From Macrostomum lignano (Eukaryota): 64,000 bases of DNA. The stretch lies in contig NIVC01002916.1 in assembly GCA_002269645.1 (NCBI GenBank), forward strand, positions 66,281-130,280. Direction: 5' to 3'. Under the pieces are notes generated by a model, which made no database searches, was not told the origin of the DNA, and saw nothing but the letters and a program-made list of their open reading frames with translations. The position numbers were made by a program, and so were the translations under genes. Below, in pieces: positions 16,801 to 64,000 of the stretch. Numbering within the stretch: position 1 is the stretch's first letter; each line of letters begins with the position of its first letter.

Positions 16801-19800
16801 ACCTGGAGACACTAAGGGGAGTGACCTGGAGACACTAAGGGGAGTGACCTGGAGGCACTAAGGGGAGTGACCTGGAGACACTAAGGGGAGTGACCTGGAG
16901 ACACTTAGGAGAGTGACCTGGAGGCACTAAGGGGAGTGACCTGGAGACACTAAGGGGAGTGACCTGGAGACACTTAGGAGAGTGACCTGGAGACACTTAG
17001 GAGAGTGACCTGGAGACACTAAGAAGGGAGGTGACCTGGAGACACTAAGAAGGGAGGTGACCTGGAGACACTTAGGAGAGTGAGTGGTCCCCAGCACCCC
17101 AGAGACGCACCAGAGATGAGCTCGGTGTCCAGCTGTTTGTGGAAGAACTGCTGCGCGAAGATGCCAGCCAGGTTGCCGGTCAGCACTCCGGGCCCGACCA
17201 CTCCGGCCGCTGCCGCCCGACCGCCGATTGACGATGACCCCGTAGACAGCGAGGAAGAAACCGACGGCGACTCGGCGACGGAGACATCGGCGCCGCCGTC
17301 GCTGGAGGCGGACGCCAGGGTGGCGAGGCGCCTGGAGCCAGTTGGAGTGTTCATGGGCTTCTGGGCGCTGCTTGCGGGCTGAGGCGCGGAGTCAGTGCGC
17401 TCGGCTGGGCCATTCGGTACAAGTAAGGGGGACCGGCCGGCAGCCACCCCAACCTCCGCAAGCGCTGATTGGCTGTCGGTCGAGAGTGGCTGAATTCCAA
17501 TGCATCTTCGTCTTGTTGTTGGGGGGGGCAAAATAGGGAATTTTTCCCAACCAGCTGGGGAGCTGGCTGCGTAGAAATCCGGAAAGTATTGCGGACTGCT
17601 TATTCCGAAAGTTGTGTAATTAGGGGTCCTTTGTTTTTGGACCAAGCATGGCTTCACATCAGAAGTCTTTGACCTCGTAATGAGGCAACCTGAAGCCCAT
17701 TGGGTTTTCTACTCTATTCTATTGTATTCTACTCTATTCTATTCTATTCTATTCTATTCTACTCTACTCTATTCTATTCTATTCTATTCTATTCTATTCT
17801 ATTCTATTGTATTCTATTCTATTCTACTCTATTCTATTCTACTCTATTCTATTCTATTCTATTCTATTCTATTCTATTCTATTCTATTCTATTCTATTCT
17901 ATTCTATTCTATTCTATTCTATTCTATTCTATTCTATTCTATTCTATTCTATTCTACTCTATTCTATTCTATTCTATTCTATTCTATTCTATTCTATTCT
18001 ATTCTATTCTATTCTATTCTATTCTATTCTATTCTATTCTACTCTATTCTATTCTATTCTATTCTATTCTATTCTATTCTATTCTATTCTATTCTATTCT
18101 ATTCTATTCTATTCTATTCTATTCTATTCTATTCTATTCTATTCTATTCTATTCTATTCTATTCTATTCTATTCTATTCTATTCTATTCTATTCTATTCT
18201 ATTCTATTCTATTCTATTCTATTCTATTCTATTCTATTCTATTCTGTTCTATTCTATTCTATTCTACTCTATTCTATTCTATTCTATTCTACTCTACTCT
18301 ATTCTATTCTATTCTATTTTATTCTATTCTATTCTATTCTATTCTATTCTATTCTATTCTATTCTATTCTATTCTATTCTATTCTACTCTATTCTATTCT
18401 ATTCTATTCTATTCTATTCTATTCTATTCTATTCTATTCTATTCTATTCTATTCTATTCTATTCTATTCTATTCTATTCTATTCTATTCTATTCTATTCT
18501 ATTCTATTCTATTCTATTCTATTCTATTCTATTCTATTCTATTCTATTCTATTCTATTCTATTCTATTCTATTCTATTCTATTCTATTCTATTCTATTCT
18601 ATTCTATTCTATTCTATTCTATTCTATTCTATTCTATTCATAGTATTGGAAAATTGTGAGTATAATTTTTACAATTATCAGTCATCAGATTGGTTTTGCT
18701 GTGAAAACACATGAAAATACAGCGTTTAAAATGAGTGCATTGCTACTACAAGTAGGAGCACACGTGACAGCGATGGAAAGCTTGCGGATTTGCAAAAACG
18801 GAATTAAAAAATTCATTATTCAAACCTGCCTTCATTTTCCGCCGACTGCGCGAGCCCTTGCCGAAGATGGCGGCGGCCGCGGCGGATGCCGTCTCCCCGG
18901 ACGGCAGGCTCTCCTGACTGCCGGCGATGCGACTCGTCAGGCTCGTCAGGCTGTCGTGCAGAACTCGGAGATGCGGCGACTCCGTCACCGACTGCCGTTT
19001 GTGCGCCGCGGCGCAGCTGTCATGGCTGCTGCCAGTCGAGGTGGCGGAAGAGACGACGGTTGCGGCGGCGACGGTGGAGAGCGGCGCGGCGGCGGCGTGG
19101 CCCGTCAGACCGGTGTCCGAGCCCGAGTGGGCGTGCAGCGGCAGGGCGGGCATCGTGCCCCACACGTGGCACTGGTCCATGGACATCTGGGGGAGAGTGC
19201 AGGCCGACTGACTGTAGGGTCCGCGACTGTGGGATCTGTGACTGTGGGATCTGTAAGACTGTGGGATCTGTGACTGTGAGATCTGTAAGACTGTGGGATC
19301 TGTGACTGTGAGATCTGTGACTGTGGAATCTGTGACTGTGTGGGATCTGTGACTGTGTGGGATCTGTGAGACTGTGGGATCTGCGACTGTGGGATCTGTG
19401 ACTGTGGGATCTGTGACTGTGAGATCTGTAAGACTGTGGGATCTGTGACTGTGAGATCTGTGACTGTGGAATCTGTGACTGTGTGGGATCTGTGACTGTG
19501 TGGGATCTGTGAGACTGTGGGATCTGCGACTGTGGGATCTGTGACTGTGTGGGATCTGTGACTGTGAAATCTGTGACTGTGGGATCTGTGACTGTGGGAT
19601 CTGTGACTGTGGGATCTGTGACTGTGGGATCTGTGACTGTGGATCTGTGACTGTGGGATCTGTGACTGTGGGATCTGTGACTGTGGGATCTGTGACTGTG
19701 AGATCTGTAAGACTGTGGGATCTGTGACTGTGAGATCTGTGACTGTGGAATCTGTGACTGTGTGGGATCTGTGACTGTGTGGGATCTGTGAGACTGTGGG

Positions 19801-21210: not shown

Positions 21211-21227
21211 GGGCGATCGGTTGATAA

Positions 21228-22430
21228 TTGACAGACAGCATTGACAGCATTGACAGCATTGACAGCACTGACTGCCAGTTGACAGCATTGGCAGCATTGA
21301 CAGCATTGACAGCATTGACAGCATTGACAGCATTGACAGCATTGACAGCATTGACAGCATTGACAGCATTGACTGGCAGTTGACAGCATTGACAGCATTG
21401 ACAGCATTGACAGCATTGACAGCATTGACTGGCAGTTGACAGCATTGACAGCATTGACAGCATTGACAGCATTGACAGCATTGACAGCACTGACTGCCAG
21501 TTGACAGACAGCATTGACAGCACTGACTGCCAGTTGACAGACAGCATTGACAGCATTGACAGCACTGACTGCCAGTTGACAGACAGCATTGACAGCATTG
21601 ACAGCACTGACTGCCAGTTGACAGACAGCATTGACAGCATTGACAGCACTGACTGCCAGTTGACAGACAGCATTGACAGCACTGACTGCCAGTTGACAGC
21701 ATTGGCAGCATTGACAGCACTGACTGCCAGTTGACAGACAGCATTGACAGCATTGACAGCACTGACTGCCAGTCAACAGACAGTATTGACAGCACTGACG
21801 GATAGTCAACAGACAGCATTGACAGCATTGACAGCACTGACTGGCAGTTGACAGACAGCGTTGACAGCACTGACTGGCAGTTGACAGACAGCATTGACTG
21901 CCAGTCAACAGACAGCATTGACAGCACTGACTGGCAGTTGACAGACAGCGTTGACAGCACTGACTGGCAGTTGACAGACAGCATTGACTGCCAGTCAACA
22001 GACAGCATTGACAGCACTGACTGGCAGTTGACAGACAGCATTGACTGCCAGTCAACAGACAGCATTGACAGCACTGACTGGCAGTTGACAGACAGCGTTG
22101 ACAGCACTGACTGGCAGTTGACAGACAGCATTGACTGCCAGTCAACAGACAGCATTGACAGCACTGACTGGCAGTTGACAGACAGCGTTGACAGCACTGA
22201 CTGGCAGTTGACAGACAGCATTGACTGCCAGTCAACAGACAGCATTGACAGCACTGACTGGCAGTTGACAGACAGCGTTGACAGCACTGACTGGCAGTTG
22301 ACAGACAGCATTGACTGCCAGTCAACAGACAGCATTGACAGCACTGACTGGCAGTTGACAGACAGCGTTGACAGCACTGACTGGCAGTTGACAGACAGCA
22401 TTGACTGCCAGTCAACAGACAGCATTGACA
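21228..22430. repeat. GACAGCATT 9-mer-derived array with higher-order units
   Basis: Direct repetition. Confidence 0.95.
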
Positions 22431-23589
22431 GCGAAACAGAATTAACAGACGGAAAATGACAGACAGAAAGCATTGACAGACTGGCTGACAGCATCTAAAA
22501 CAGGCTGTACCGCCCGAACAAGTGCACGGCGGGGATTCCGGAAGCGGTGGCATGGGTTCAAGAGGATTAAAACTTGAAAAAGCTACCCGAAAAGTACGCA
22601 GGAAATAATGCTCTGTTCTCCGGGGGGGGGGGGGGGGGGGCTAATGAGCCGGTGCCGGGACTTCTCGCTGTCCATCCCCGTTCGTGAGATCTGAGCAGCC
22701 GAGTAACTGGGCTGATCAAAGCGACTCTCGAGGCTTGAAGGCAAACTTGAGAATGGGCGAGCCTTCGGACTCACCCTCGTTAACGCCGAGGCCACTGCTG
22801 GATGCTAAAAGTCCAGCCAAAGGGATATTTCCCCATGCCCTCCTTTGTTTCCTCTCTTCCCAATGGCGTTCATTTGGGTTGAAACAAAACTCACCCCAGC
22901 TGGAGGCGTCAAGTGAGGACAAGAGGGGGGGGGCGTGCCGACCCTCAGCTTCCCTGATGAAGACGCGCGCGCACTTCATTTGCGTCCCCAACTCCGCATG
23001 TCCCCCCTTCCCACTTCCCCAATTCAGAAAGCATTTTCTTGGGCCTGCTGTTGGTCCTTTCCCGCCTTATTTTCCTGGCCAGATATTTCAGATAAATTTA
23101 TGACCCATCCAGGCGGAATTGCTCCATCAATGGGCCAACTAATACGCAGACGGAGGAGCGTCAGTTGGTGCGCATCGCAACAAGTTCGGCTCATTGGTAT
23201 AGTTCGAACAGGAGGGGGTGGGGCCTGTCGGCCTGGCCAGGGCGAATCTGAATGACAGGCAGTTAACAGGGAATTCCAATGTCACCGGGTGCTGCTGCCC
23301 AGGCCGAGACTGAGGACCGCAGGCCCAACAGAGAGGAATTTCGAGGACTACCGGAGAGAGGCCGTCGGTTCTGGGACTTGCGTGCCTCTCAACCCAAGGA
23401 GTGCCTTGCAAGCCGGAAGCTGAATACGCCTTGCAGAGCATTGGCAGCGTTTGACTGAAGCGTGGCTTTTAAAAAAAAAGAATTTCCCGGTCATCGTTTC
23501 AGTACTTTCTGTCTATGATTAAGGATACGTAATCTTTAATCAGCATGTGTGATCATTTATATGTGATTCTGTGTGATTCTGTGGGACAA

Positions 23590-26680: not shown

Positions 26681-27714
26681 AGAGAGAGACAATGCGCAGT
26701 GCAGGAGGCGCCAGTGCGGGCTGAACTCCCCAGCTTCATTTTCACTTTCAATTGGAATTTGTCAAGCCTGAAAACCGGACCAGCTGGCCTTCGAAGGACA
26801 GGCAGATGGCCTTTGAGTGACGGGTTTTTTCCAGTTCCCGCGAAACTCGCCAGCAGCTGGCGCCCATCGGGACAACAGTCGCACTTTTAGATTAATTAAT
26901 AATTAATTGATTTGTTTGAATTGCGCAAACTGCTTTCCGTTTTAAGGTCCGTTGCCACTTAATTTTGTGACTAATGCAATCTTCGCATTGCAAATTCATG
27001 TAAATCACTGCGATAGTCTTCAAGCAGAGGGACAGATATTTGCTTTAATGATTTTTCTGCTTGTAGAAATTGCTTCTAGAAGTAGGCTAACAAAGATGGG
27101 ATGTTGGCACGAGTGAATGGGAGAATCTCTGGAGCAGAGAGGAGCGATAGAGGGAGCGCGGAGCAGGCAAGACATGAAATTTGACACCCCGGTGCTCCCA
27201 GGGTGTCTCGGGATGAGGCTGGCTGGGCGAGCTGTTCGGGGATTCCTTCATCTCTGCGCTGCATGCTTGGCAATCAGGCTGTCAAATGTCGGAATGTACT
27301 TTAACTGGCCAAGGATAAGCTGAAGGTGCAACGCACTTATTTTTGAGCACGAGCCCAGAATTACTCATAATGCGGCCCGGCACGGCAGCGAACCCGTGTA
27401 ATGAAAAGCGCCTTAGCTGGCGGGAGATGGCGGGACGGAGAGTGAGGCTGAGGCTAAAGAAATAAGCGGCAGGTGCGCTGCAAAACACTTCTTCTACCTT
27501 CTTCTTGAGGAACCCCGACTCTCAGAACTGCATATGAGGCGTGTTTTTGCACTGCCGCTGTCATATTTCAAAGAATCAATAGGACAGGATGGGGAGATGC
27601 GCACGGCTGTCTGAATACCTGTTGAATGCAGGTAGTATTGGGGCAGCAGTGAGTGGATGGGAACAGTTGGATTGTAGGAAGGGGGAGAGAGAGCGATAGA
27701 CAAGGAGTTATGAA

Positions 27715-29005
27715 GGAAGATCGGAGAGGCTGGGAGGGAAGATAGGGGGGATAAGGGAGATCGGGGAGGCTGGGAGGGAAGATAGGGGGGATAAGGGAGA
27801 TCGGGGAGGCTGGGAGGGAAGATAGGGGAGATAAGGGAGATCGGGGAGGCTGGGAGGGAAGATAGGGGAGATAAGGGAGATCGGGGAGGCTGGGAGGGAA
27901 GATAGGGGGAGATAAGGGAGATCGGGGAGGCTGGGAGGGAAGATAGGGGAGATAAGGGAGATCGGGGAGGCTGGGAGGGAAGATAGGGGGAGATAAGGGA
28001 GATCGGAGGGCTGATAAGGAAGATAGGGGAGATAAGGGAGATAGGGGAGATAAGGGAGATCGGGAGGCTGGGAGGGAAGATAGGGGAGATAAGGGAATCG
28101 GGGAGGCTGGGAGGCTGGGAGGGAAGATAGGGGGAGATAAGGGAGATCGGAGGGCTGATAAGGAAGATAGGGGAGATAAGGGAGATCGGGGAGGCTGGTA
28201 GGGAAGATAGGGGAGATAAGGGAGATCGGAGGGCTGATAAGGAAGATAGGGGAGATAAGGGAGATCGGGGAGGCTGGGAAGGAAGATAGGAGAGATAAGG
28301 GAGATCGGGGAGGCTGGGAGGAAAGATAGGAGAGATAAGGGAAATCGGGGAGGCTGGTAGGGAAGATAGGGAAGATAAGGGAGATCGGAGAGGCTGGGAG
28401 GGAAGATAGGGGAGATAAGGGAGATCGGGGAGGCTGGGAGGGAAGATAGGGGGAGATAAGGGAGATCGGGGAGGCTGGGAGGGAAGATAGGGGGAGATAA
28501 GGGAGATCGGGAAGGCTGGGAGGGAAGATAGGGGAGATAAGGGAGATCGGGGAGGCTGGGAGGGAAGATAGGGGAGATAAGGGAGATCGGAGGGCTGATA
28601 AGGAAGATAGGGGAGATAAGGGAGATCGGGGAGGCTGGTAGGGAAGATAGGGGAGATAAGGGAGATCGGAGGGCTGATAAGGAAGATAGGGGAGATAAGG
28701 GAGATCGGAGGGCTGATAAGGAAGATAGGGGAGATAAGGGAGATCGGGGAGGCTGGGAGGGAAGATAGGGAAGATAAGGGAGATCGGGGAGGCTGGGAGG
28801 GAAGATAGGGGGAGATAAGGGAGATCGGGGAGGCTGGGAGGGAAGATAGGGGGAGATAAGGGAGATCGGGGAGGCTGGGAGGGAAGATAGGAGAGATAAG
28901 GGAGATCGGGGAGGCTGGGAGGGCAGATAGGGGGAGATAAGGGAGATCGGGGAGGCTGGGAGGGAAGATAGGGGGAGATAAGGGAGATCGGAGGGCTGAT
29001 AAGGA
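27715..29005. repeat. 39-40 bp purine-rich minisatellite (GGGAGATCGGGGAGGCTGGGAGGGAAGATAGGGGAGATAA)
   Basis: Direct repetition. Confidence 0.95.
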
Positions 29006-30084
29006 ATATAGTGGGTCTGGAAGGAGATCGAAAACAAAATCGGCGGGCAGAAGACTTTGAACTATGAAGAAAATCAAGATTATCGCAAAAAAGCAGAGGT
29101 CCATACTGGCTTGCGTGGATGTGCTCCCAACACATGGGACGGGGGAGCATGAATCCATGGAGGCGGACAGGTAGGCCGCTGACGGAATTAATGGATGGAC
29201 AGGTTTGTCTTGAAACACACATGTCGGAGGAAATGAAATAAACTAATGAAAAAACTGGGACCTGACGGTCTTGGGGATTTTAGTGGCGTGATGGAGCAGG
29301 CCAGTAGCCGGCAGCGCAGCCGCCTTACCCTGTACTGGTTGGTGGCCTCGATGCGATGCCCGCGCTCTCCTAGCAGTCGATTGCCTGCAGCTCAGACAGA
29401 AGAGACGCTGGCGTGAGAGCGGCAGATTTCCAGCTTCCCAGGGGGAATCGCGCAGCAGCAGACGGGCAGCTTTCCCACAAGGCCTTTTATTCACTCCCTG
29501 CCTTATCTCGCCCTTGCACGCCAGTTTTCTAGCCCCAGCCAATCACAGGGCCGCGACCTTCAGTCCGCTGAGCTATTTTTAGCTACAGATGGTTGCCCCG
29601 CCCTCTTCAGCCAATCGTCCGTCTCGGCCCAGTATTCAGCAGAATGCCTGCTCCACCAAGGCATCCTTTTTAACTCATGCGCGTGGGCGGCTGCAAGCTT
29701 TGCAACAATGATATTATCGCTCATTAATTGATCGCCCATTAAGGCCGACCAGTGAAACTGATGCCTAATCTTCTAATTGGAGTAGATCCGAGCCAAAGAG
29801 CCAAAGAGATTTAACTAAGGCTTGCTTGAGACAGAATTCTGGCGCTTATTCTTCATCACAAACCAGTGCCTGACTCAGGTGAGCTGGGACCATTGCTATC
29901 TTTCACAATGGACCACGCGATCTCCACCGGGCACAGGTTCAAGAGCTAGTTAATGAGCTGAAAATTTATTGGCGGGTTGCTCGTTTAGCAAACTGATAAC
30001 GAATAAAGCCCTTTTTACTTGTATGGCAACTTTGAGCTGACTCGCGTCTTCAACTCTTCTCCATTCACCCATTGATCGCCTTAA

Positions 30085-35243: not shown

Positions 35244-43573
<8,330 letters not shown>

Positions 43574-53294: not shown

Positions 53295-54680
53295 CGACAA
53301 TTGACTGCCACAATTTGACTGCGGTCAATTTTAACTGCGGACAATTTGACTGCCGAGCAATTTGACTGCCGAGCAATTTGACTGCCGAGCAATTTGACTG
53401 CCGAGCAATTTGACTGCCGAGCAATTTGACTGCCGAGCAATTTGACTGCCGAGCAATTTGACTGCCGAGCAATTTGACTGCCGAGCAATTTGACTGCCGA
53501 GCAATTTGACTGCCGAGCAATTTGACTGCCGAGCAATTTGACTGCTGAGCAATTTGACTGCCGAGCAATTTGACTGCACACAAAATAACTGCGGACAAAA
53601 TGACTGCGGTGAATTTGACTGCCGACAATTTTACTGCCGACAAAATGACTGCGGCAACTTGACTGCCAGCAAAATGACTGCCTAAAAACACTCCAGTCTC
53701 TTTATTAATGATCGTATTTATGCAAGGCTAGCAAGGCTTTTTACATGAGCAAAAATGGAAGCTACATTGGCTTTCAACAATACGTGCATGTTTATCTACT
53801 AGTAAAAGAAGCGTCATATCAAGAGAAGCGAAGTCATGTCAAACATAAAAGCCGTCATGTAAAACAAAAGAAAATTCATCAAACATAAAAGCAGCGTAAG
53901 GTTGCACATATAAGAAACGTAACCTAAAATATAAAGGAAGCGTCATTTAAAAATGTTTACGTCTTGGGATGTTAAGGCTTACGGGGGCGATTGCTGTGAT
54001 TTTGAGGCTTACTGGGGGAATTGCTGAGATCTCAATGCTTACTGGGGAATTGCTAAGATGTCAAGGCTTACAACGGGAAATTGCTGAGATGTCAAGACAA
54101 ATAGGATACACATTTATAATTTTCGTCTCTTGCTTATTGGCCGCCCCGAAGGGGTCGCAAGATTGCTATACTAATGGTCAAACTGATCTTTTACATGTAG
54201 CTGTGTTCAATGAATGCTGTTTATAGGGTTTTCTTTCTCCCATGTCATATTAATCTCATATTTTAATCTTATTGATTCTTTCAAATTTAAAAAAATGCCA
54301 CATACTCCTCCTATCAGAAGAGCTTTATTAGGCCTAATCAAAGCTAAAGTTAGTGATACGCTAGCGCGCGGCTAGCTCTATAAGCAGCATTCATTGAACA
54401 CAGCCACGCTGGTACATGTGGAGGATCCGTTTGAACATTAGTAGATATACATGCAAGTATTGTTGAAAGCCAAATGTAGCTTGCATTTTTGTTCATTGTA
54501 AAAAGTCTTGCTAGCCTTGCATAAATACGATCATGAATAAAGAGACTGGAGAGTTTTTTAGGCAGTCATTTTTGGCAGTCATTTTGCTGGCAGTCATTTT
54601 GCTGGCAGTCAAATTGCCGCAATCATTTTGTCAGCAGTCAAATTGTTGGCAGTCAAATTGTCGGCAGTCATTTTGTCGGC
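53295..54680. mobile_element. Foldback-type element with long modular inverted repeats (subterminal AATTTGACTGC tandem repeats)
   Basis: Left arm 53295-53801 plus 54169-54226 mirrors right arm 54378-54680. Confidence 0.75.
53802..54168. mobile_element. 367-bp insertion nested in the left arm of the foldback element
   Basis: Interrupts the mirror symmetry, flanked by TACTA direct repeats (53797-53801, 54169-54173), carries a GC hairpin GCCGCCCCGAAGGGGTCGC. Confidence 0.55.
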
Positions 54681-55271
54681 AGTGTGGCGGCCAGACTACG
54701 CGACCGGCAGCACCAGTGCAGCCGCACTGGAAACCCCCCAACCTCTGTCTAGCTGATGTGGGGTGGTTGCGCACCAGCTTAGCCGGCTCCCTAAGCCAGG
54801 GGGTTGGCGTAGCCTATCACGCCACGCCACATGTTCGCACCTCCCTTGGCCCCTCATGAACCTCGCGCAGTTTGTTGTACATATAAATTTATACGCAAAG
54901 CAGCACAAAACTCATTCGATCTATTGAAATTAAAAGGCCTTCCGCATTGATTTTGCATTTTGCATTTGAGCCTGACCAAAACTTTTTTGTTGCCCTTTGT
55001 TGCTATACATGCTACCATGTTACCGCATGCAAATGCAAAGTGCGCATACAAAATATGAAACGCGAATCGAATCCCTTGACTTGATAGAGTGGAGTGGAAC
55101 TCGAAAGGAAGGAATCAGCAGACACCTATGCCGTATGCCCGTATGGTAAAAATTCAAGCAGCATCCAATCCAGTTGGCGGGCGCGGGCGGATTAGTGGGC
55201 CTGGGCCTAAGTATTAATGCATGCAGCAGCTGGAGTTAGTTGATGAGCGCGCGGCATGCAGTTAAAGAGGC

Positions 55272-55277
55272 AAAAAA
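55272..55277 (-). terminator. Pol III oligo-dT terminator (T6) of the 5S gene, repeated in each unit
   Basis: TTTTTT immediately at the 5S 3' end. Confidence 0.9.
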
Positions 55278-55395
55278 GACAACAGCATTTGGTATTCCCA
55301 GGCGGTCACCCATCCAAGTACTAACCAAACCCAACGTTGCTTAACTTCGGTGATCAGACGAGAACCGGTGTTTTCAACGTGGTATGGCCGTTGCC
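55277..55395 (-). rRNA. 5S rRNA: 5S rRNA gene, copy 1
   Basis: GGCAACGGCCATACCACGTTGAAAACACCGGTTCTCGTCTGATCACCGAAGTTAAGC…GTTAGTACTTGGATGGGTGACCGCCTGGGAATACC…GCTGTTGTCT, followed by a T-run; box A and box C present, terminal helix pairs. Confidence 0.98.
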
Positions 55396-55418
55396 ACTGG
55401 CTGATAGGAGCTGAGCTC

Positions 55419-55426
55419 ATAATTAA
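55419..55426 (-). promoter_or_regulatory. TATA-like element (TTAATTAT) at -31 to -24 of the 5S gene, repeated in each unit
   Basis: Position typical of upstream AT-rich elements of 5S genes. Confidence 0.5.
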
Positions 55427-55649
55427 CCTGAACCTGCAGCTACATGTATATACGGACCATACGGTACGGATCAATTGTGTGGGCCGCCTCTCGTCTATAC
55501 TCTAATTATTGTAATATATAATTAGTAATGCGGACGGATTTACCGCGCTCGTAGTATATAGTGAACTATAGTGGTGATTTGCAGTCAAGTCAAAGTCAAC
55601 CTAACTAGCTCAACGCAAACAGTAACGCGTACAGTCCAGCTTGACTCTG

Positions 55650-55932
55650 TATACTCAGCAACATTGAAAAGTCGCCACTCTATGCGCCAGTGATCAATTT
55701 GTCTTGGACTATTCTGAAATAAAAGATGCCAGAAAAACTGATCGGGGTAGCTTTGATCCGTCCAAACCTCGCACACCGCTCCCCCACTCCATTCCTCAAC
55801 TCAAGTCTGCCGTGGCGTAGCTGAGTTGCGTCGCTCGCAAATATTGAGAGAGACTTTACCTGCACTCTCTCAAAAGTGGCGACCACAGACGGAATCTTCT
55901 GTGATGGCGACTTTTCAATGTTGCTGAGTATA
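55650..55932. mobile_element. 283-bp MITE-like element (Tc1/mariner-like, TA-flanked) in each array unit; other copies 57297-57579, 58944-59226, 60591-60873, 62234-62516, 63877-window end
   Basis: Perfect 28-bp inverted repeat TATACTCAGCAACATTGAAAAGTCGCCA (55650-55677) / TGGCGACTTTTCAATGTTGCTGAGTATA (55905-55932). Confidence 0.75.
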
Positions 55933-56234
55933 ATTCATTGTTGGCGCCATCAACAAAGTTGTACATGTACATATGCACATCCGCACGCATAGAGCGATCT
56001 AAGAAATTACATTTGATTATTGCAACTCGAAGAGATCTAGTATAGCCTAGTATAGCCTCTGTACACCGCGATGCATATGCGCGCTATATCATGCTATGCT
56101 ATAATGGTGCAACAACTAATTTACAACTTGCGGGTAAATAGAATATTTAGTTTAAAATAATTAGTAGGACACGCTAAATCCAGAATTACAATCAACCAAC
56201 TATAATTAATTGATGTTGTCTTTAGCTTTGTTAG

Positions 56235-56347
56235 GCAGCCGCGGTAGCGCGGCTTGTCAAAAATTGAGTAGATCGCTCAATTGGATCCACGCGGTGTCTT
56301 ACCATGCAAAATTAAGAGTCTTCGCAGTAAGAGACCGTCGATACGGC
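56235..56347 (-). ncRNA. SL RNA: Spliced-leader (SL) RNA gene, copy 1; SL exon 56303-56347
   Basis: GCCGTATCGACGGTCTCTTACTGCGAAGACTCTTAATTTTGCATG|GTAAGA: the exon ends in AUG (flatworm hallmark), the donor GTAAGA can pair with TCTTAC in the exon, stem-loop AATTGAG…CTCAATT, Sm site AATTTTTGA, 3' hairpin AGCCGCG-CTAC-CGCGGCT. Transcript ends are approximate. Confidence 0.92.
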
Positions 56348-56923
56348 AAAGAGACGAGCTGGAACCGGCTCTCACTGAGTGCACAGCTCTCCGTTTGAGC
56401 CTCGAGCCCTAGGGCAAATTATTTTGTTGAACTTTATCTACTCCAAGTAAGTTTTGCCGACTAGTGCAGCATTATTTTGCACTAGAGCTTGAAAAGAGCT
56501 GCGCGAAAAAGTTTCTTTCTTTCTTTTAGCCGACATGTTTAGAAAGTGTGCACACAAACGCGCCTCCTAGTTGATTGATTGATGGCTATAAATCAAGTAA
56601 AATTCCCATGTGAGAAATGGAGATACTCGTAAAACTATTAATACACAGTGCATAAGTGCATTAGCGTTACCGCGTGCAAATGCAAAGTGCGCATACAAAA
56701 TATGAAACGCGAATCGAATCCCTTGACTTGATAGAGTGGAGTGGAACTCGAAAGGAAGGAATCAGCAGACACCTATGCCGTATGCCCGTATGGTAAAAAT
56801 TCAAGCAGCATCCAATCCAGTTGGCGGGCGCGGGCGGATTAGTGGGCCTGGGCCTAAGTATTAATGCATGCAGCAGCTGGAGTTAGTTGATGAGCGCGCG
56901 GCATGCAGTTAAAGAGGCAAAAA

Positions 56924-57042
56924 AGACAACAGCATTTGGTATTCCCAGGCGGTCACCCATCCAAGTACTAACCAAACCCAACGTTGCTTAACTTCGGTGA
57001 TCAGACGAGAACCGGTGTTTTCAACGTGGTATGGCCGTTGCC
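56924..57042 (-). rRNA. 5S rRNA: 5S rRNA gene, copy 2
   Basis: Same sequence as copy 1. Confidence 0.98.
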
Positions 57043-57881
57043 ACTGGCTGATAGGAGCTGAGCTCATAATTAACCTGAACCTGCAGCTACATGTATATAC
57101 GGACCATACGGTACGGATCAATTGTGTGGGCCGCCTCTCGTCTATACTCTAATTATTGTAATATATAATTAGTAATGCGGACGGATTTACCGCGCTCGTA
57201 GTATATAGTGAACTATAGTGGTGATTTGCAGTCAAGTCAAAGTCAACCTAACTAGCTCAACGCAAACAGTAACGCGTACAGTCCAGCTTGACTCTGTATA
57301 CTCAGCAACATTGAAAAGTCGCCACTCTATGCGCCAGTGATCAATTTGTCTTGGACTATTCTGAAATAAAAGATGCCAGAAAAACTGATCGGGGTAGCTT
57401 TGATCCGTCCAAACCTCGCACACCGCTCCCCCACTCCATTCCTCAACTCAAGTCTGCCGTGGCGTAGCTGAGTTGCGTCGCTCGCAAATATTGAGAGAGA
57501 CTTTACCTGCACTCTCTCAAAAGTGGCGACCACAGACGGAATCTTCTGTGATGGCGACTTTTCAATGTTGCTGAGTATAATTCATTGTTGGCGCCATCAA
57601 CAAAGTTGTACATGTACATATGCACATCCGCACGCATAGAGCGATCTAAGAAATTACATTTGATTATTGCAACTCGAAGAGATCTAGTATAGCCTAGTAT
57701 AGCCTCTGTACACCGCGATGCATATGCGCGCTATATCATGCTATGCTATAATGGTGCAACAACTAATTTACAACTTGCGGGTAAATAGAATATTTAGTTT
57801 AAAATAATTAGTAGGACACGCTAAATCCAGAATTACAATCAACCAACTATAATTAATTGATGTTGTCTTTAGCTTTGTTAG

Positions 57882-57994
57882 GCAGCCGCGGTAGCGCGGC
57901 TTGTCAAAAATTGAGTAGATCGCTCAATTGGATCCACGCGGTGTCTTACCATGCAAAATTAAGAGTCTTCGCAGTAAGAGACCGTCGATACGGC
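57882..57994 (-). ncRNA. SL RNA: SL RNA gene, copy 2
   Basis: Same sequence as copy 1. Confidence 0.92.
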
Positions 57995-58570
57995 AAAGAG
58001 ACGAGCTGGAACCGGCTCTCACTGAGTGCACAGCTCTCCGTTTGAGCCTCGAGCCCTAGGGCAAATTATTTTGTTGAACTTTATCTACTCCAAGTAAGTT
58101 TTGCCGACTAGTGCAGCATTATTTTGCACTAGAGCTTGAAAAGAGCTGCGCGAAAAAGTTTCTTTCTTTCTTTTAGCCGACATGTTTAGAAAGTGTGCAC
58201 ACAAACGCGCCTCCTAGTTGATTGATTGATGGCTATAAATCAAGTAAAATTCCCATGTGAGAAATGGAGATACTCGTAAAACTATTAATACACAGTGCAT
58301 AAGTGCATTAGCGTTACCGCGTGCAAATGCAAAGTGCGCATACAAAATATGAAACGCGAATCGAATCCCTTGACTTGATAGAGTGGAGTGGAACTCGAAA
58401 GGAAGGAATCAGCAGACACCTATGCCGTATGCCCGTATGGTAAAAATTCAAGCAGCATCCAATCCAGTTGGCGGGCGCGGGCGGATTAGTGGGCCTGGGC
58501 CTAAGTATTAATGCATGCAGCAGCTGGAGTTAGTTGATGAGCGCGCGGCATGCAGTTAAAGAGGCAAAAA

Positions 58571-58689
58571 AGACAACAGCATTTGGTATTCCCAGGCGGT
58601 CACCCATCCAAGTACTAACCAAACCCAACGTTGCTTAACTTCGGTGATCAGACGAGAACCGGTGTTTTCAACGTGGTATGGCCGTTGCC
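58571..58689 (-). rRNA. 5S rRNA: 5S rRNA gene, copy 3
   Basis: Same sequence as copy 1. Confidence 0.98.
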
Positions 58690-59528
58690 ACTGGCTGATA
58701 GGAGCTGAGCTCATAATTAACCTGAACCTGCAGCTACATGTATATACGGACCATACGGTACGGATCAATTGTGTGGGCCGCCTCTCGTCTATACTCTAAT
58801 TATTGTAATATATAATTAGTAATGCGGACGGATTTACCGCGCTCGTAGTATATAGTGAACTATAGTGGTGATTTGCAGTCAAGTCAAAGTCAACCTAACT
58901 AGCTCAACGCAAACAGTAACGCGTACAGTCCAGCTTGACTCTGTATACTCAGCAACATTGAAAAGTCGCCACTCTATGCGCCAGTGATCAATTTGTCTTG
59001 GACTATTCTGAAATAAAAGATGCCAGAAAAACTGATCGGGGTAGCTTTGATCCGTCCAAACCTCGCACACCGCTCCCCCACTCCATTCCTCAACTCAAGT
59101 CTGCCGTGGCGTAGCTGAGTTGCGTCGCTCGCAAATATTGAGAGAGACTTTACCTGCACTCTCTCAAAAGTGGCGACCACAGACGGAATCTTCTGTGATG
59201 GCGACTTTTCAATGTTGCTGAGTATAATTCATTGTTGGCGCCATCAACAAAGTTGTACATGTACATATGCACATCCGCACGCATAGAGCGATCTAAGAAA
59301 TTACATTTGATTATTGCAACTCGAAGAGATCTAGTATAGCCTAGTATAGCCTCTGTACACCGCGATGCATATGCGCGCTATATCATGCTATGCTATAATG
59401 GTGCAACAACTAATTTACAACTTGCGGGTAAATAGAATATTTAGTTTAAAATAATTAGTAGGACACGCTAAATCCAGAATTACAATCAACCAACTATAAT
59501 TAATTGATGTTGTCTTTAGCTTTGTTAG

Positions 59529-59641
59529 GCAGCCGCGGTAGCGCGGCTTGTCAAAAATTGAGTAGATCGCTCAATTGGATCCACGCGGTGTCTTACCATG
59601 CAAAATTAAGAGTCTTCGCAGTAAGAGACCGTCGATACGGC
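59529..59641 (-). ncRNA. SL RNA: SL RNA gene, copy 3
   Basis: Same sequence as copy 1. Confidence 0.92.
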
Positions 59642-60217
59642 AAAGAGACGAGCTGGAACCGGCTCTCACTGAGTGCACAGCTCTCCGTTTGAGCCTCGAG
59701 CCCTAGGGCAAATTATTTTGTTGAACTTTATCTACTCCAAGTAAGTTTTGCCGACTAGTGCAGCATTATTTTGCACTAGAGCTTGAAAAGAGCTGCGCGA
59801 AAAAGTTTCTTTCTTTCTTTTAGCCGACATGTTTAGAAAGTGTGCACACAAACGCGCCTCCTAGTTGATTGATTGATGGCTATAAATCAAGTAAAATTCC
59901 CATGTGAGAAATGGAGATACTCGTAAAACTATTAATACACAGTGCATAAGTGCATTAGCGTTACCGCGTGCAAATGCAAAGTGCGCATACAAAATATGAA
60001 ACGCGAATCGAATCCCTTGACTTGATAGAGTGGAGTGGAACTCGAAAGGAAGGAATCAGCAGACACCTATGCCGTATGCCCGTATGGTAAAAATTCAAGC
60101 AGCATCCAATCCAGTTGGCGGGCGCGGGCGGATTAGTGGGCCTGGGCCTAAGTATTAATGCATGCAGCAGCTGGAGTTAGTTGATGAGCGCGCGGCATGC
60201 AGTTAAAGAGGCAAAAA

Positions 60218-60336
60218 AGACAACAGCATTTGGTATTCCCAGGCGGTCACCCATCCAAGTACTAACCAAACCCAACGTTGCTTAACTTCGGTGATCAGAC
60301 GAGAACCGGTGTTTTCAACGTGGTATGGCCGTTGCC
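60218..60336 (-). rRNA. 5S rRNA: 5S rRNA gene, copy 4
   Basis: Same sequence as copy 1. Confidence 0.98.
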
Positions 60337-61171
60337 ACTGGCTGATAGGAGCTGAGCTCATAATTAACCTGAACCTGCAGCTACATGTATATACGGACCA
60401 TACGGTACGGATCAATTGTGTGGGCCGCCTCTCGTCTATACTCTAATTATTGTAATATATAATTAGTAATGCGGACGGATTTACCGCGCTCGTAGTATAT
60501 AGTGAACTATAGTGGTGATTTGCAGTCAAGTCAAAGTCAACCTAACTAGCTCAACGCAAACAGTAACGCGTACAGTCCAGCTTGACTCTGTATACTCAGC
60601 AACATTGAAAAGTCGCCACTCTATGCGCCAGTGATCAATTTGTCTTGGACTATTCTGAAATAAAAGATGCCAGAAAAACTGATCGGGGTAGCTTTGATCC
60701 GTCCAAACCTCGCACACCGCTCCCCCACTCCATTCCTCAACTCAAGTCTGCCGTGGCGTAGCTGAGTTGCGTCGCTCGCAAATATTGAGAGAGACTTTAC
60801 CTGCACTCTCTCAAAAGTGGCGACCACAGACGGAATCTTCTGTGATGGCGACTTTTCAATGTTGCTGAGTATAATTCATTGTTGGCGCCATCAACAAAGT
60901 TGTACATGTACATATGCACATCCGCACGCATAGAGCGATCTAAGAAATTACATTTGATTATTGCAACTCGAAGAGATCTAGTATAGCCTAGTATAGCCTC
61001 TGTACACCGCGATGCATATGCGCGCTATATCATGCTATGCTATAATGGTGCAACAACTAATTTACAACTTGCGGGTAAATAGAATATTTAGTTTAAAATA
61101 ATTAGTAGGACACGCTAAATCCAGAATTACAATCAACTATAATTAATTGATGTTGTCTTTAGCTTTGTTAG

Positions 61172-61284
61172 GCAGCCGCGGTAGCGCGGCTTGTCAAAAA
61201 TTGAGTAGATCGCTCAATTGGATCCACGCGGTGTCTTACCATGCAAAATTAAGAGTCTTCGCAGTAAGAGACCGTCGATACGGC
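61172..61284 (-). ncRNA. SL RNA: SL RNA gene, copy 4
   Basis: Same sequence as copy 1. Confidence 0.92.
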
Positions 61285-61860
61285 AAAGAGACGAGCTGGA
61301 ACCGGCTCTCACTGAGTGCACAGCTCTCCGTTTGAGCCTCGAGCCCTAGGGCAAATTATTTTGTTGAACTTTATCTACTCCAAGTAAGTTTTGCCGACTA
61401 GTGCAGCATTATTTTGCACTAGAGCTTGAAAAGAGCTGCGCGAAAAAGTTTCTTTCTTTCTTTTAGCCGACATGTTTAGAAAGTGTGCACACAAACGCGC
61501 CTCCTAGTTGATTGATTGATGGCTATAAATCAAGTAAAATTCCCATGTGAGAAATGGAGATACTCGTAAAACTATTAATACACAGTGCATAAGTGCATTA
61601 GCGTTACCGCGTGCAAATGCAAAGTGCGCATACAAAATATGAAACGCGAATCGAATCCCTTGACTTGATAGAGTGGAGTGGAACTCGAAAGGAAGGAATC
61701 AGCAGACACCTATGCCGTATGCCCGTATGGTAAAAATTCAAGCAGCATCCAATCCAGTTGGCGGGCGCGGGCGGATTAGTGGGCCTGGGCCTAAGTATTA
61801 ATGCATGCAGCAGCTGGAGTTAGTTGATGAGCGCGCGGCATGCAGTTAAAGAGGCAAAAA

Positions 61861-61979
61861 AGACAACAGCATTTGGTATTCCCAGGCGGTCACCCATCCA
61901 AGTACTAACCAAACCCAACGTTGCTTAACTTCGGTGATCAGACGAGAACCGGTGTTTTCAACGTGGTATGGCCGTTGCC
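61861..61979 (-). rRNA. 5S rRNA: 5S rRNA gene, copy 5
   Basis: Same sequence as copy 1. Confidence 0.98.
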
Positions 61980-62818
61980 ACTGGCTGATAGGAGCTGAGC
62001 TCATAATTAACCTGAACCTGCAGCTACATGTATATACGGACCATACGGTACGGATCAATTGTGTGGGCCGCCTCTCGTCTATACTCTAATTATTGTAATA
62101 TATAATTAGTAATGCGGACGGATTTACCGCGCTCGTAGTATATAGTGAACTATAGTGGTGATTTGCAGTCAAGTCAAAGTCAACCTAACTAGCTCAACGC
62201 AAACAGTAACGCGTACAGTCCAGCTTGACTCTGTATACTCAGCAACATTGAAAAGTCGCCACTCTATGCGCCAGTGATCAATTTGTCTTGGACTATTCTG
62301 AAATAAAAGATGCCAGAAAAACTGATCGGGGTAGCTTTGATCCGTCCAAACCTCGCACACCGCTCCCCCACTCCATTCCTCAACTCAAGTCTGCCGTGGC
62401 GTAGCTGAGTTGCGTCGCTCGCAAATATTGAGAGAGACTTTACCTGCACTCTCTCAAAAGTGGCGACCACAGACGGAATCTTCTGTGATGGCGACTTTTC
62501 AATGTTGCTGAGTATAATTCATTGTTGGCGCCATCAACAAAGTTGTACATGTACATATGCACATCCGCACGCATAGAGCGATCTAAGAAATTACATTTGA
62601 TTATTGCAACTCGAAGAGATCTAGTATAGCCTAGTATAGCCTCTGTACACCGCGATGCATATGCGCGCTATATCATGCTATGCTATAATGGTGCAACAAC
62701 TAATTTACAACTTGCGGGTAAATAGAATATTTAGTTTAAAATAATTAGTAGGACACGCTAAATCCAGAATTACAATCAACCAACTATAATTAATTGATGT
62801 TGTCTTTAGCTTTGTTAG

Positions 62819-62930
62819 GCAGCCGCGGTAGCGCGGCTTGTCAAAATTGAGTAGATCGCTCAATTGGATCCACGCGGTGTCTTACCATGCAAAATTAAGA
62901 GTCTTCGCAGTAAGAGACCGTCGATACGGC
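62819..62930 (-). ncRNA. SL RNA: SL RNA gene, copy 5 (Sm site one T shorter, AATTTTGA)
   Basis: Same as copy 1 except a 1-nt deletion in the Sm U-run. Confidence 0.9.
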
Positions 62931-63507
62931 AAAGAGACGAGCTGGAACCGGCTCTCACTGAGTGCACAGCTCTCCGTTTGAGCCTCGAGCCCTAGGGCAA
63001 ATTATTTTGTTGAACTTTATCTACTCCAAGTAAGTTTTGCCGACTAGTGCAGCATTATTTTGCACTAGAGCTTGAAAAGAGCTGCGCGAAAAAGTTTCTT
63101 TCTTTCTTTTAGCCGACATGTTTAGAAAGTGTGCACACAAACGCGCCTCCTAGTTGATTGATTGATGGCTATAAATCAAGTAAAATTCCCATGTGAGAAA
63201 TGGAGATACTCGTAAAACTATTAATACACAGTGCATAAGTGCATTAGCGTTACCGCGTGCTAATGCAAAGTGCGCATACAAAATATGAAACGCGAATCGA
63301 ATCCCTTGACTTGATAGAGTGGAGTGGAACTCGAAAGGAAGGAATCAGCAGACACCTATGCCGTATGCCCGTATGGTAAAAATTCAAGCAGCATCAATCC
63401 AGTTGGCGGGCGCGCGGGCGGATTAGTGGGCCTGGGCCTAAGTATTAATGCATGCAGCAGCTGGAGTTAGTTGATGAGCGCGCGGCATGCAGTTAAAGAG
63501 GCAAAAA

Positions 63508-63626
63508 AGACAACAGCATTTGGTATTCCCAGGCGGTCACCCATCCAAGTACTAACCAAACCCAACGTTGCTTAACTTCGGTGATCAGACGAGAACCGGT
63601 GTTTTCAACGTGGTATGGCCGTTGCC
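63508..63626 (-). rRNA. 5S rRNA: 5S rRNA gene, copy 6
   Basis: Same sequence as copy 1. Confidence 0.98.
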
Positions 63627-64000
63627 ACTGGCTGATAGGAGCTGAGCTCATAATTAACCTGAACTGCAGCTACATGTATATACGGACCATACGGTACGGA
63701 TCAATTGTGTGGGCCTCTCGTCTATACTCTAATTATTGTAATATATAATTAGTAATGCGGACGGATTTACCGCGCTCGTAGTATATATGAACTATAGTGG
63801 TGATTTGCCAGTCAAGTCAAAGTCAACCTAACTAGCTCAACGCAAACAGTAACGCGTACAGTCCAGCTTGACTCTGTATACTCAGCAACATTGAAAAGTC
63901 CGCACTCTATGCGCCAGTGATCAATTTGTCTTGGACTATTCTGAAATAAAAGATGCCAGAAAAACTGATCGGGGTAGCTTTGATCCGTCCAACCTCGCAC

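What the first reader, a model, noticed from the sequence alone, without database searches (positions are those of the whole stretch)
55019..64000. Composite tandem unit linking 5S rRNA and spliced-leader RNA genes in a flatworm-type genome
Seen: each 1647-bp unit carries a 5S gene and, about 580 bp downstream on the same strand, a complete SL RNA gene (AUG-ended 45-nt exon, GTAAG donor, Sm site, three hairpins). Established: 5S-SL linkage occurs in nematodes and some other trans-splicing lineages and is gained and lost repeatedly. Inference: I do not recall it being described for Macrostomum-type flatworms, so this may be an independent linkage that co-amplifies a Pol III and a Pol II small-RNA gene by concerted evolution.
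Basis: partly seen in the sequence, partly recalled or inferred. Interest (0 to 1): 0.8.

Follow-up and report, generated by a model that had tools for sequence, protein, structure and literature searches.

The report
Flatworm 5S rRNA–spliced-leader gene array
The end of this window is a tandem array in which every 1.65-kb repeat carries one 5S ribosomal RNA gene and one intact Macrostomum-type spliced-leader RNA gene; such linkage is common in other trans-splicing animals, I found no report of it in flatworms, and the leader differs at 7 of 45 bases from the published Macrostomum leader.

Summary
From 55020 to the window end, on the minus strand, lie six full-length 5S rRNA genes (Rfam 116.5 bits each). 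There are five complete units of 1647 bp (one is 1643 bp), 99.6-100% identical. In each complete unit a 114-nt spliced-leader (SL) RNA gene starts 576 bp downstream of the 5S gene. It has a 45-nt exon ending in ATG, a GTAAG donor paired back into the exon, three hairpins and an AAUUUUUGA Sm site.

The exon matches the published Macrostomum leader at 38 of 45 positions, with the same length and a 24-nt identical core. An environmental macrostomid contig (L006) also has an SL gene and a 5S gene on one strand, in a unit of about 1 kb. Other contigs show the canonical SL gene next to U1 snRNA (L007) or alone (L003), so the linkage varies.

Published M. lignano 5S primers match exactly and predict a 1643-bp product; the published fragment is 1645 bp and its non-5S part was called "non-transcribed spacer".

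No searchable paper reports 5S-SL linkage in any flatworm. I could not test whether this variant leader is used on mRNAs.

Verdict: a new member of a known kind, of moderate interest.

The parts
55020..64000 (-). Tandem array of the composite 5S-SL unit: one 3'-truncated terminal unit, five complete units, and the tail of a sixth. It runs off the window end.
   Evidence: Units are 1647 bp (one 1643 bp) and 99.6-100% identical. The junction with unique DNA is at 55019/55020.
56924..57042 (-). 5S rRNA gene of unit 1, followed by a T6 terminator run and preceded by TTAATTAT at about -31 to -24. Identical copies lie at 55277-55395, 58571-58689, 60218-60336, 61861-61979 and 63508-63626.
   Evidence: RF00001, 116.5 bits, model positions 1-120, no non-canonical pairs flagged. 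Sequence read.
56234..56347 (-). SL RNA gene of unit 1, about 114 nt. Further copies lie at 57881-57994, 59528-59641, 61171-61284 and 62818-62930 (113 nt, with T4 in the Sm site).
   Evidence: Homology to Macrostomum SL genes.
56303..56347 (-). SL exon, 45 nt: GCCGTATCGACGGTCTCTTACTGCGAAGACTCTTAATTTTGCATG.
   Evidence: 38/45 identical to the published M. cliftonense / M. lignano SL and the same length. The 5' end is inferred from that published sequence.
56298..56302 (-). GTAAG splice donor. GGUAAGA is base-paired with UCUUACU of the exon in hairpin 1.
   Evidence: The same donor is reported for M. lignano.
56257..56265 (-). Sm-binding-site-like AAUUUUUGA, single-stranded between hairpins 2 and 3.
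55650..55932 (.). 283-bp MITE-like element with perfect 28-nt terminal inverted repeats (TATACTCAGCAACATTGAAAAGTCGCCA). It sits at the same place in every unit: 57297-57579, 58944-59226, 60591-60873, 62234-62516, and a partial copy from 63877.
   Evidence: An element of similar size with related termini (TATACTCAGCAA...) is in L003 at 1134-1427.

Best explanation
This is one edge of a 5S rDNA array of a macrostomid flatworm. The 'spacer' of each unit carries a complete SL RNA gene.

Shown:
- Each 1647-bp unit has an intact 5S rRNA gene and, 576 bp downstream on the same strand, a 114-nt gene.
- That gene belongs to the Macrostomum SL RNA family. It has a 45-nt AUG-ended exon, a GUAAG donor paired into the exon, three hairpins and an Sm site.
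- The units are nearly identical, and all share one transposon-like insertion.

Inferred:
- 5S is transcribed by Pol III from its internal promoter and terminates at the T6 run.
- The SL RNA is transcribed separately by Pol II from an snRNA-type promoter. The T5 run inside its Sm site would stop Pol III.
- The SL RNA is capped, binds Sm proteins and donates its 45-nt exon to pre-mRNAs.

Open: whether this 7-nt variant is the main leader of the source species or a second, minor one.
For: - 5S: full-length Rfam hits, six copies.
- SL: the 39-mer occurs five times against 0 expected.
- SL homology: 38/45 identity and equal length to the leader found on Macrostomum mRNAs.
- That exon family sits at the 5' end of two environmental mRNA contigs, L001 and L002.
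- The window gene and three canonical genes (L003, L006, L007) fold into the same three-hairpin plus Sm layout, with z-scores from -3.0 to -4.7.
- Between the window unit and L006 only the 5S gene (97.6%) and the SL gene (85%) align; the spacers do not. This argues for purifying selection on both genes.
- L006 shows the same linkage and strand in a unit of about 1022 bp.
- The motif CTCTTT / CTCCTT / TTCTTT directly upstream of +1 is shared in all four genomic contexts. This argues for DNA-level gene copies rather than retrocopies.
- Concerted evolution: 99.6-100% unit identity, and the same 283-bp insertion in every unit.
- Published M. lignano outward-facing 5S primers predict 1643 bp here against the 1645 bp reported. 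The array is therefore not an assembly artefact.
Against: - There is no RNA evidence for this exact exon. The variant string appears in no paper, and the protein-database probes were empty and uninformative.
- The exon differs at 7 of 45 positions from a leader that is otherwise invariant in three described species and five environmental sequences.
- No Rfam SL model matches, even at E<=10.
- The 4-sequence alignment shows no compensatory base changes, so the structure rests on thermodynamics and family resemblance.
- No shared upstream promoter motif was found.
- One of the five copies has a shortened Sm T-run.
Confidence: 0.7

Rival explanations
1. Second SL class. The window comes from M. 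lignano or a close sibling, whose main leader is the canonical one encoded elsewhere. The 5S-linked array then encodes a distinct, so far unnoticed, minor or specialised leader.
For: - In-silico PCR with the M. lignano primers gives 1643 bp against the published 1645 bp, while another macrostomid has a unit of about 1022 bp. Both primers match exactly, whereas L006 has one mismatch in 5SF.
- The M. lignano SL gene is described as 109 bp with 8 copies found by exact match to the canonical exon. The window gene is 114 nt with a different exon and would have been missed by that search.
- The variant gene keeps every functional element.
Against: [quoted passage not shown]
- The best protein-database hit to the DYRK exon was only 70% identical and none was labelled Macrostomum. 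This does not support the source being an annotated M. lignano assembly.
- There is no RNA evidence.
Confidence: 0.25
2. Silent passenger or pseudogene. An SL gene copy was captured in the 5S spacer, lost expression, and is kept uniform only because it rides along with 5S homogenisation.
For: - Seven exon changes relative to an otherwise invariant leader.
- One copy has a shortened Sm T-run.
- No identifiable conserved promoter.
- The literature treats this region as non-transcribed spacer.
Against: - The differences are not spread like neutral decay. The donor, its pairing partner, the 24-nt core, the Sm site and both 3' hairpins are all kept, and hairpin 3 is even longer and richer in G+C.
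- The flanking spacer is unalignable between lineages while the gene is 85% identical.
- A canonical SL gene is also 5S-linked in L006.
Confidence: 0.15
3. Assembly artefact or chance resemblance. The array, or the SL-like segment, is not real biology.
For: Small 1-nt indels between units, which increase towards the window end, look like long-read noise.
Against: - The published PCR fragment is the same size.
- An independent contig shows the same linkage.
- 0 chance matches are expected for the SL motif.
Confidence: 0.02

Closest known systems
C. elegans 5S rDNA-SL1 cluster (about 110 tandem copies carrying SL1 RNA and 5S rRNA genes)
   Same: One repeat unit carries a Pol III 5S gene and a Pol II SL RNA gene, in a monomorphic tandem array (PMC1657053). 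Pol II and Pol III are reported to occupy SL1 and 5S respectively within that cluster (bioRxiv 10.64898/2026.01.07.698080, abstract seen).
   Different: Different phylum, and an unrelated 22-nt leader. From my own memory, the nematode genes are divergently oriented in a unit of about 1 kb; here both genes are on the same strand in a 1.65-kb unit. Homology of the linkage itself is unlikely.
SL RNA genes clustered with 5S rDNA in other lineages (for example calanoid copepods; stated generally in the SLFinder paper)
   Same: SL genes lie in tandem repeats of a few kb, often close to 5S rRNA genes (PMC7346339; PMC4664967).
   Different: Those are other lineages. None of the papers I could search reports this arrangement for a flatworm.
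Macrostomum lignano SL RNA gene (Ustyantsev and Berezikov 2021)
   Same: Same family: the exon core is identical, the donor is GTAAG, and there are three hairpins with an Sm-like site between hairpins 2 and 3.
   Different: The published gene is 109 bp with the canonical exon ...GACTCAATTTATTGCATG and 8 copies, and no 5S context is mentioned. The window gene is 114 nt, has the exon ...GACTCTTAATTTTGCATG, and has divergent hairpins 2 and 3.
Macrostomum 5S rDNA cluster used as a FISH marker (Zadesenets et al. 2017, 2020)
   Same: Both primers match the window 5S gene exactly, and the amplicon size agrees within 2 bp (1645 bp published, 1643 bp predicted). M. lignano has a single terminal cluster.
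   Different: Those papers describe the non-5S part as non-transcribed spacer and do not mention an SL gene.
Schistosoma mansoni SL RNA tandem repeat (595 nt)
   Same: A flatworm SL RNA gene in a homogeneous tandem array, with an AUG-ended leader (PMC2770079).
   Different: That paper describes the 595-nt SL unit and the 5S genes separately and reports no linkage.

Membership tests
5S rRNA (Rfam RF00001) | Full-length match to the covariance model above the gathering score | tested here: met
   Six hits at 116.5 bits against a gathering score of 38, covering model positions 1-120, with no broken pairs flagged.
5S rRNA (Rfam RF00001) | Pol III gene layout: a T-run terminator directly after the gene | tested here: met
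   TTTTTT follows the 3' end of every copy. Conservation of the internal control region is judged only by eye against the Rfam consensus.
Macrostomum / flatworm SL RNA | The exon sequence is the one found at mRNA 5' ends | tested here: inconclusive
   38/45 identity and the same length as the published leader. The canonical form is seen on environmental mRNAs. This exact variant was not found in any RNA or paper I could reach.
Macrostomum / flatworm SL RNA | The exon ends in AUG and is followed directly by a GU (GTAAG) donor | tested here: met
   ...TTTTGCATG|GTAAG in all 5 copies.
Macrostomum / flatworm SL RNA | Three stem-loops, with the donor paired into the exon in stem-loop 1 | tested here: met
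   The minimum-energy and centroid folds show this, with z about -3.0. Three canonical genes fold into the same architecture. There is no covariation support.
Macrostomum / flatworm SL RNA | A single-stranded Sm-binding site between stem-loops 2 and 3 | tested here: met
   AAUUUUUGA in four copies and AAUUUUGA in one.
Macrostomum / flatworm SL RNA | A TMG-capped small RNA of about 100-110 nt that takes part in trans-splicing | not testable with these tools
   This needs RNA data or wet-lab work.
Rfam SL RNA families (curated models) | A match to any curated SL covariance model | tested here: not met
   No hit even at E<=10. The canonical macrostomid SL genes in L003, L006 and L007 also gave no Rfam hit at gathering score. 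The library therefore appears to lack a model for this family, and the miss says little.
5S-SL linked tandem arrays | Both genes lie inside one head-to-tail repeating unit, intact in each copy | tested here: met
   All five complete units carry both genes.
5S-SL linked tandem arrays | The linkage is reproducible outside this assembly | tested here: met
   L006 has an SL gene at 122-229 and a 5S gene at 498-616 on the same strand, and the next SL-like start is at 1143. The amplicon size also agrees with the literature.

The most novel reading that the evidence does not exclude
The window comes from M. lignano or a close sibling. Its 5S rDNA cluster would then encode a second, previously overlooked spliced-leader class (exon ...GACUCUUAAUUUUGCAUG), distinct from the canonical Macrostomum leader. 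Copy number of this class would be tied to that of 5S rRNA. Macrostomum would then have two SL classes with different genomic homes: one 5S-linked, and one dispersed or U1-linked.
Probability: 0.25. Interest if true: 0.6.

Novelty: new member of a known kind. Interest (0 to 1): 0.4.

Why it matters
- Extends 5S-SL gene linkage to Platyhelminthes. I found no report of it there. Together with the U1-linked and solo SL genes in other macrostomid contigs, it gives a within-genus system for studying how such linkages are gained and lost.
- Practical point for Macrostomum work: the '5S rDNA NTS' FISH probe probably also contains an SL RNA gene.
- Exact-match searches with the canonical leader would miss this gene. 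They would also miss any mRNAs that carry its leader.
- If the variant is used, SL-based annotation of trans-spliced genes and operons would need to be revisited.

Tried and rejected
- **Rfam at E<=10 on the units:** only 5S matched. There was no SL model hit and no other small RNA.
- **Exact-product look-ups** of the 5S-spanning and SL-antisense ORFs: not on record.
- **Protein search with the 5S-spanning ORF**: most hits were unrelated eukaryotes. For example, L004/L005 is a 5S-tRNA cluster. P0007 led to the useful locus L006.
- **Species identification through the DYRK2-like exon:** the best hit was 70% identical and no Macrostomum-labelled protein appeared, so this was uninformative.
- **Search for mRNAs carrying the variant leader through its in-frame peptides.** The 35-aa ORF was too short for the word-indexed search. 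A synthetic 40-aa query found 7 candidates and none scored. The exhaustive HMMER search gave one repetitive 913-aa protein matching in ten stretches, which I did not follow up. These searches say nothing either way, because canonical-leader peptides were also nearly absent from the database.
- **Literature string search** for the variant exon: 0 papers.
- **Covariation:** 0 compensatory pairs in the 4-sequence alignment.
- **Shared upstream promoter k-mers:** none across the four SL genes. Only the window and L003 share a loose block at about -100 to -73.
- **M. lignano unique-fragment primers R1-R5:** absent from the window.
- **Retrocopy of a trans-spliced mRNA:** rejected, because the intron half with the Sm site is present and the -6 to -1 flank is conserved.
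- **Papers not held:** Brehm 2000 (JBC), Vierna 2013 (Heredity) and Wasik 2015 (PNAS). I have an unverified memory that cestode SL repeats might contain 5S. It could not be checked and is not used as evidence.
Full report
**1. Observation**

An Rfam scan of the whole window finds six full-length 5S rRNA genes. Each scores 116.5 bits against a gathering score of 38 and covers model positions 1-120. All are on the minus strand, at 55277-55395, 56924-57042, 58571-58689, 60218-60336, 61861-61979 and 63508-63626.

Cutting the array at the 5S 5' ends gives units of 1647, 1647, 1647, 1643 and 1647 bp. They are 99.6-100% identical to each other.

Reading one unit on the minus strand shows the 5S gene followed by TTTTTT. 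A second gene starts 576 bp further on. Its sequence is GCCGTATCGACGGTCTCTTACTGCGAAGACTCTTAATTTTGCATG|GTAAGACACCGCGTGGATCCAATTGAGCGATCTACTCAATTTTTGACAAGCCGCGCTACCGCGGCTGCC.

The exon-plus-donor 39-mer occurs five times, against 0 expected by chance. The gene coordinates are 56234-56347, 57881-57994, 59528-59641, 61171-61284 and 62818-62930.

The array ends at 55019/55020, inside the spacer between 5S and SL. The last unit therefore has a 5S gene but no SL gene. On the other side the array runs off the window end. The genes are on the minus strand.

**2. Is the second gene an SL RNA gene?**

No Rfam SL model matches, even at E<=10. Canonical macrostomid SL genes found later also gave no Rfam hit at gathering score. 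The library therefore appears to have no model for this family.

The published leader of M. cliftonense is GCCGTAAAGACGGTCTCTTACTGCGAAGACTCAATTTATTGCATG, 45 nt. It is identical to the M. lignano and M. hystrix leaders wherever they overlap (PMC10468722 supplement; PMC8629364). The window exon has the same length, starts with the same GCCGT, ends with the same GCATG and shares a 24-nt core. It differs at 7 positions: AA to TC near the 5' end, and CAATTTATT to CTTAATTTT.

The RNA folds into three hairpins, with a minimum free energy of -37.6 kcal/mol and z about -3.0. In hairpin 1 the donor GGUAAGA pairs with UCUUACU of the exon. AAUUUUUGA lies single-stranded between hairpins 2 and 3. This is the layout reported for the 109-bp M. 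lignano gene.

**3. Related sequences from elsewhere**

I scanned public collections for the invariant core GGTCTCTTACTGCGAAGACTC. The results:

- **L001 and L002.** These two contigs begin with the canonical leader joined to coding sequence. By eye they are an isocitrate-dehydrogenase-like mRNA and a zinc-knuckle (CNBP-like) mRNA. This is direct evidence that the exon family is a spliced leader.
- **L003.** A canonical SL gene at 615-722 with no 5S gene in the 3-kb contig, followed by a protein-coding gene.
- **L007.** A eukaryotic contaminant contig inside a Flavobacteriaceae MAG. A U1 snRNA gene at 1121-1283 is followed by a canonical SL gene at 1589-1694.
- **L006.** Reached through a protein search with the ORF that spans the 5S gene. 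This 1293-bp ENA contig has a canonical SL gene at 122-229 and a 5S gene at 498-616 on the same strand. A further SL-like start lies at 1143, implying a 5S-SL unit of about 1022 bp.

All four genomic SL genes fold into the same three-hairpin plus Sm architecture.

Between the window unit and L006 only the 5S gene (97.6%) and the SL gene (85%) can be aligned. The spacers cannot. That is the pattern expected if both genes are under selection.

All four genes share CTCTTT, CTCCTT or TTCTTT directly upstream of +1. This argues against retrocopies.

The 4-sequence alignment shows no compensatory changes. The structure therefore rests on energy and family resemblance, not on covariation.

**4. Concerted evolution**

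Besides the near-identity of the units, each unit carries the same 283-bp element at the same place. It has perfect 28-nt terminal inverted repeats, and unit 1's copy is at 55650-55932. L003 contains an element of similar size with related termini, TATACTCAGCAA.... It is therefore probably a MITE that inserted once and was then spread through the array by homogenisation.

**5. Which organism, and is this the leader in use?**

Zadesenets et al. amplified a 1645-bp "5S rDNA" fragment from M. lignano with outward-facing primers 5SF and 5SR. They described the non-5S part as non-transcribed spacer (PMC5704211, PMC7013459). Both primers match the window 5S gene exactly. In-silico PCR on the window gives 1643 bp, and 1639 bp for the short unit. 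L006 has one mismatch in 5SF and a unit of about 1 kb. This points to M. lignano or a close relative as the source.

That conflicts with the exon, because the leader reported for M. lignano is the canonical one. The M. lignano SL gene was found by exact match to that leader: 109 bp and 8 copies. On the other hand, the DYRK2-like exon in the window found no hit better than 70% identity and no Macrostomum-labelled protein.

I could not resolve this. Three possibilities remain:

- The source is a species whose leader is this variant.
- The 5S array encodes a second, minor leader class.
- The SL copy is a silent passenger.

[quoted passage not shown] A second leader in those species would therefore have to be rare.

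Attempts to find mRNAs with the variant leader through its in-frame peptides were empty, but uninformative. The variant string occurs in no searchable paper.

**6. Mechanism**

The composite unit, the intact genes, the homogeneity and the conservation of the linkage in a second macrostomid are shown. The rest is inferred from what is established for 5S and SL RNA genes:

- Pol III transcribes 5S from its internal control region and stops at T6.
- Pol II transcribes the SL RNA from an snRNA-type promoter. The T5 run in the Sm site is incompatible with Pol III read-through.
- Sm assembly and trans-splicing donate the 45-nt exon, whose terminal AUG can serve as a start codon.
- Unequal exchange or gene conversion amplifies both genes together.

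I could not define a promoter. No k-mer is shared by all four upstream regions.

**7. Comparison with what is known, and novelty**

5S-SL linkage is well known elsewhere. C. elegans SL1 lies in about 110 tandem copies together with 5S (PMC1657053). Copepods show it too (PMC4664967). [quoted passage not shown]

For flatworms, the S. mansoni SL unit is a 595-nt repeat, and the same paper describes the 5S genes separately without reporting any linkage (PMC2770079). The 2025 survey of SL gene clusters in parasitic flatworms does not mention 5S at all (PMC12582326).

Eight of my nine full-text searches asked about 5S-SL linkage or Macrostomum 5S rDNA; none found a report of the linkage in Macrostomum or any other flatworm, and the ninth, for the variant exon string, found no paper. 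Older subscription papers (Davis 1997; Brehm 2000, 2002; Zayas 2005) could not be read.

I rate this a new member of a known kind. It has two points of added interest. The leader is a divergent variant. And macrostomid SL genes occur in at least three contexts (5S-linked, U1-linked, solo), which fits repeated gain and loss of linkage.

**8. Verdict**

Interest is 0.4.

Noticed in passing
window 55650-55932 (and the same position in each unit); L003 1134-1427: A 283-bp element with perfect 28-nt terminal inverted repeats (TATACTCAGCAAC...) bounded by TA. A similar-sized element with related termini lies in an environmental macrostomid contig. It looks like a MITE family shared among macrostomids. 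Here it is fixed in every 5S-SL unit and absent from the other 55 kb of the window.
   Followed up: partly
L007 1121-1283 and 1589-1694 (JAGQZA010000190.1, 'Flavobacteriaceae bacterium' MAG): A contig binned in a bacterial MAG carries a eukaryotic U1 snRNA gene (151.7 bits) followed about 300 bp later by a canonical Macrostomum-type SL RNA gene, plus TTAGGG-like repeats at about 270-340. This is flatworm contamination of the MAG, and it is an example of U1-SL linkage.
   Followed up: partly
L001 and L002 (JGI Ga0316592 contigs): Environmental contigs that are trans-spliced macrostomid mRNAs. By eye they are isocitrate-dehydrogenase-like and CNBP-like zinc-knuckle mRNAs. Both start with the canonical leader ...GACTCAATTTATTGCATG.
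   Followed up: partly
L006 1268-1293 and 1143-1172: The contig ends in Illumina adapter sequence (AGATCGGAAGAGCGTCGTGTAGGGAA). The second SL-like copy diverges after GACGGTCTCTT, so the contig end may be chimeric or may hold a degenerate copy.
   Followed up: no
window 53301-53682 and 54561-54683: Two arrays of related 15-16-bp tandem repeats, both built on GACTGCC on the minus strand (consensus units TTGACTGCCGAGCAAT and GGCAGTCATTTTGTT as reported), bracket about 900 bp immediately beside the array boundary. Their origin is unknown; a transposon-derived repeat is one possibility.
   Followed up: no
window 35244-35738 and about 36580-36822, minus strand: Exons of a DYRK2/3-like protein kinase (hits carry PF00069 and DYRK2 names; best identity 70%). 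The intervening sequence is filled with a tandem repeat that stays open in several reading frames.
   Followed up: partly
window 1-53000 in general (for example 13477-14980, 17680-18714, 20316-22553, 27494-29222, 37518-38654): The window is packed with long micro- and minisatellite arrays that produce long spurious ORFs on both strands. No tRNA genes were found in the 64 kb. GC content is 48.6% overall and 44.3% in the 5S-SL unit.
   Followed up: no
window 62818-62930 and 63627-64000: The fifth SL copy has AAUUUUGA (T4) instead of T5 in the Sm site. The last partial unit has several 1-3-nt indels and a GC/CG swap in the inverted repeat. These may be real variants or long-read assembly noise that increases towards the contig end.
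   Followed up: partly
L004 / L005 (ENA metagenome scaffolds): An unrelated eukaryotic locus with three to four tandem 5S genes spaced 186 bp apart, embedded in a dense cluster of about 20 tRNA genes. It was pulled in only because one ORF spans two 5S copies.
   Followed up: no
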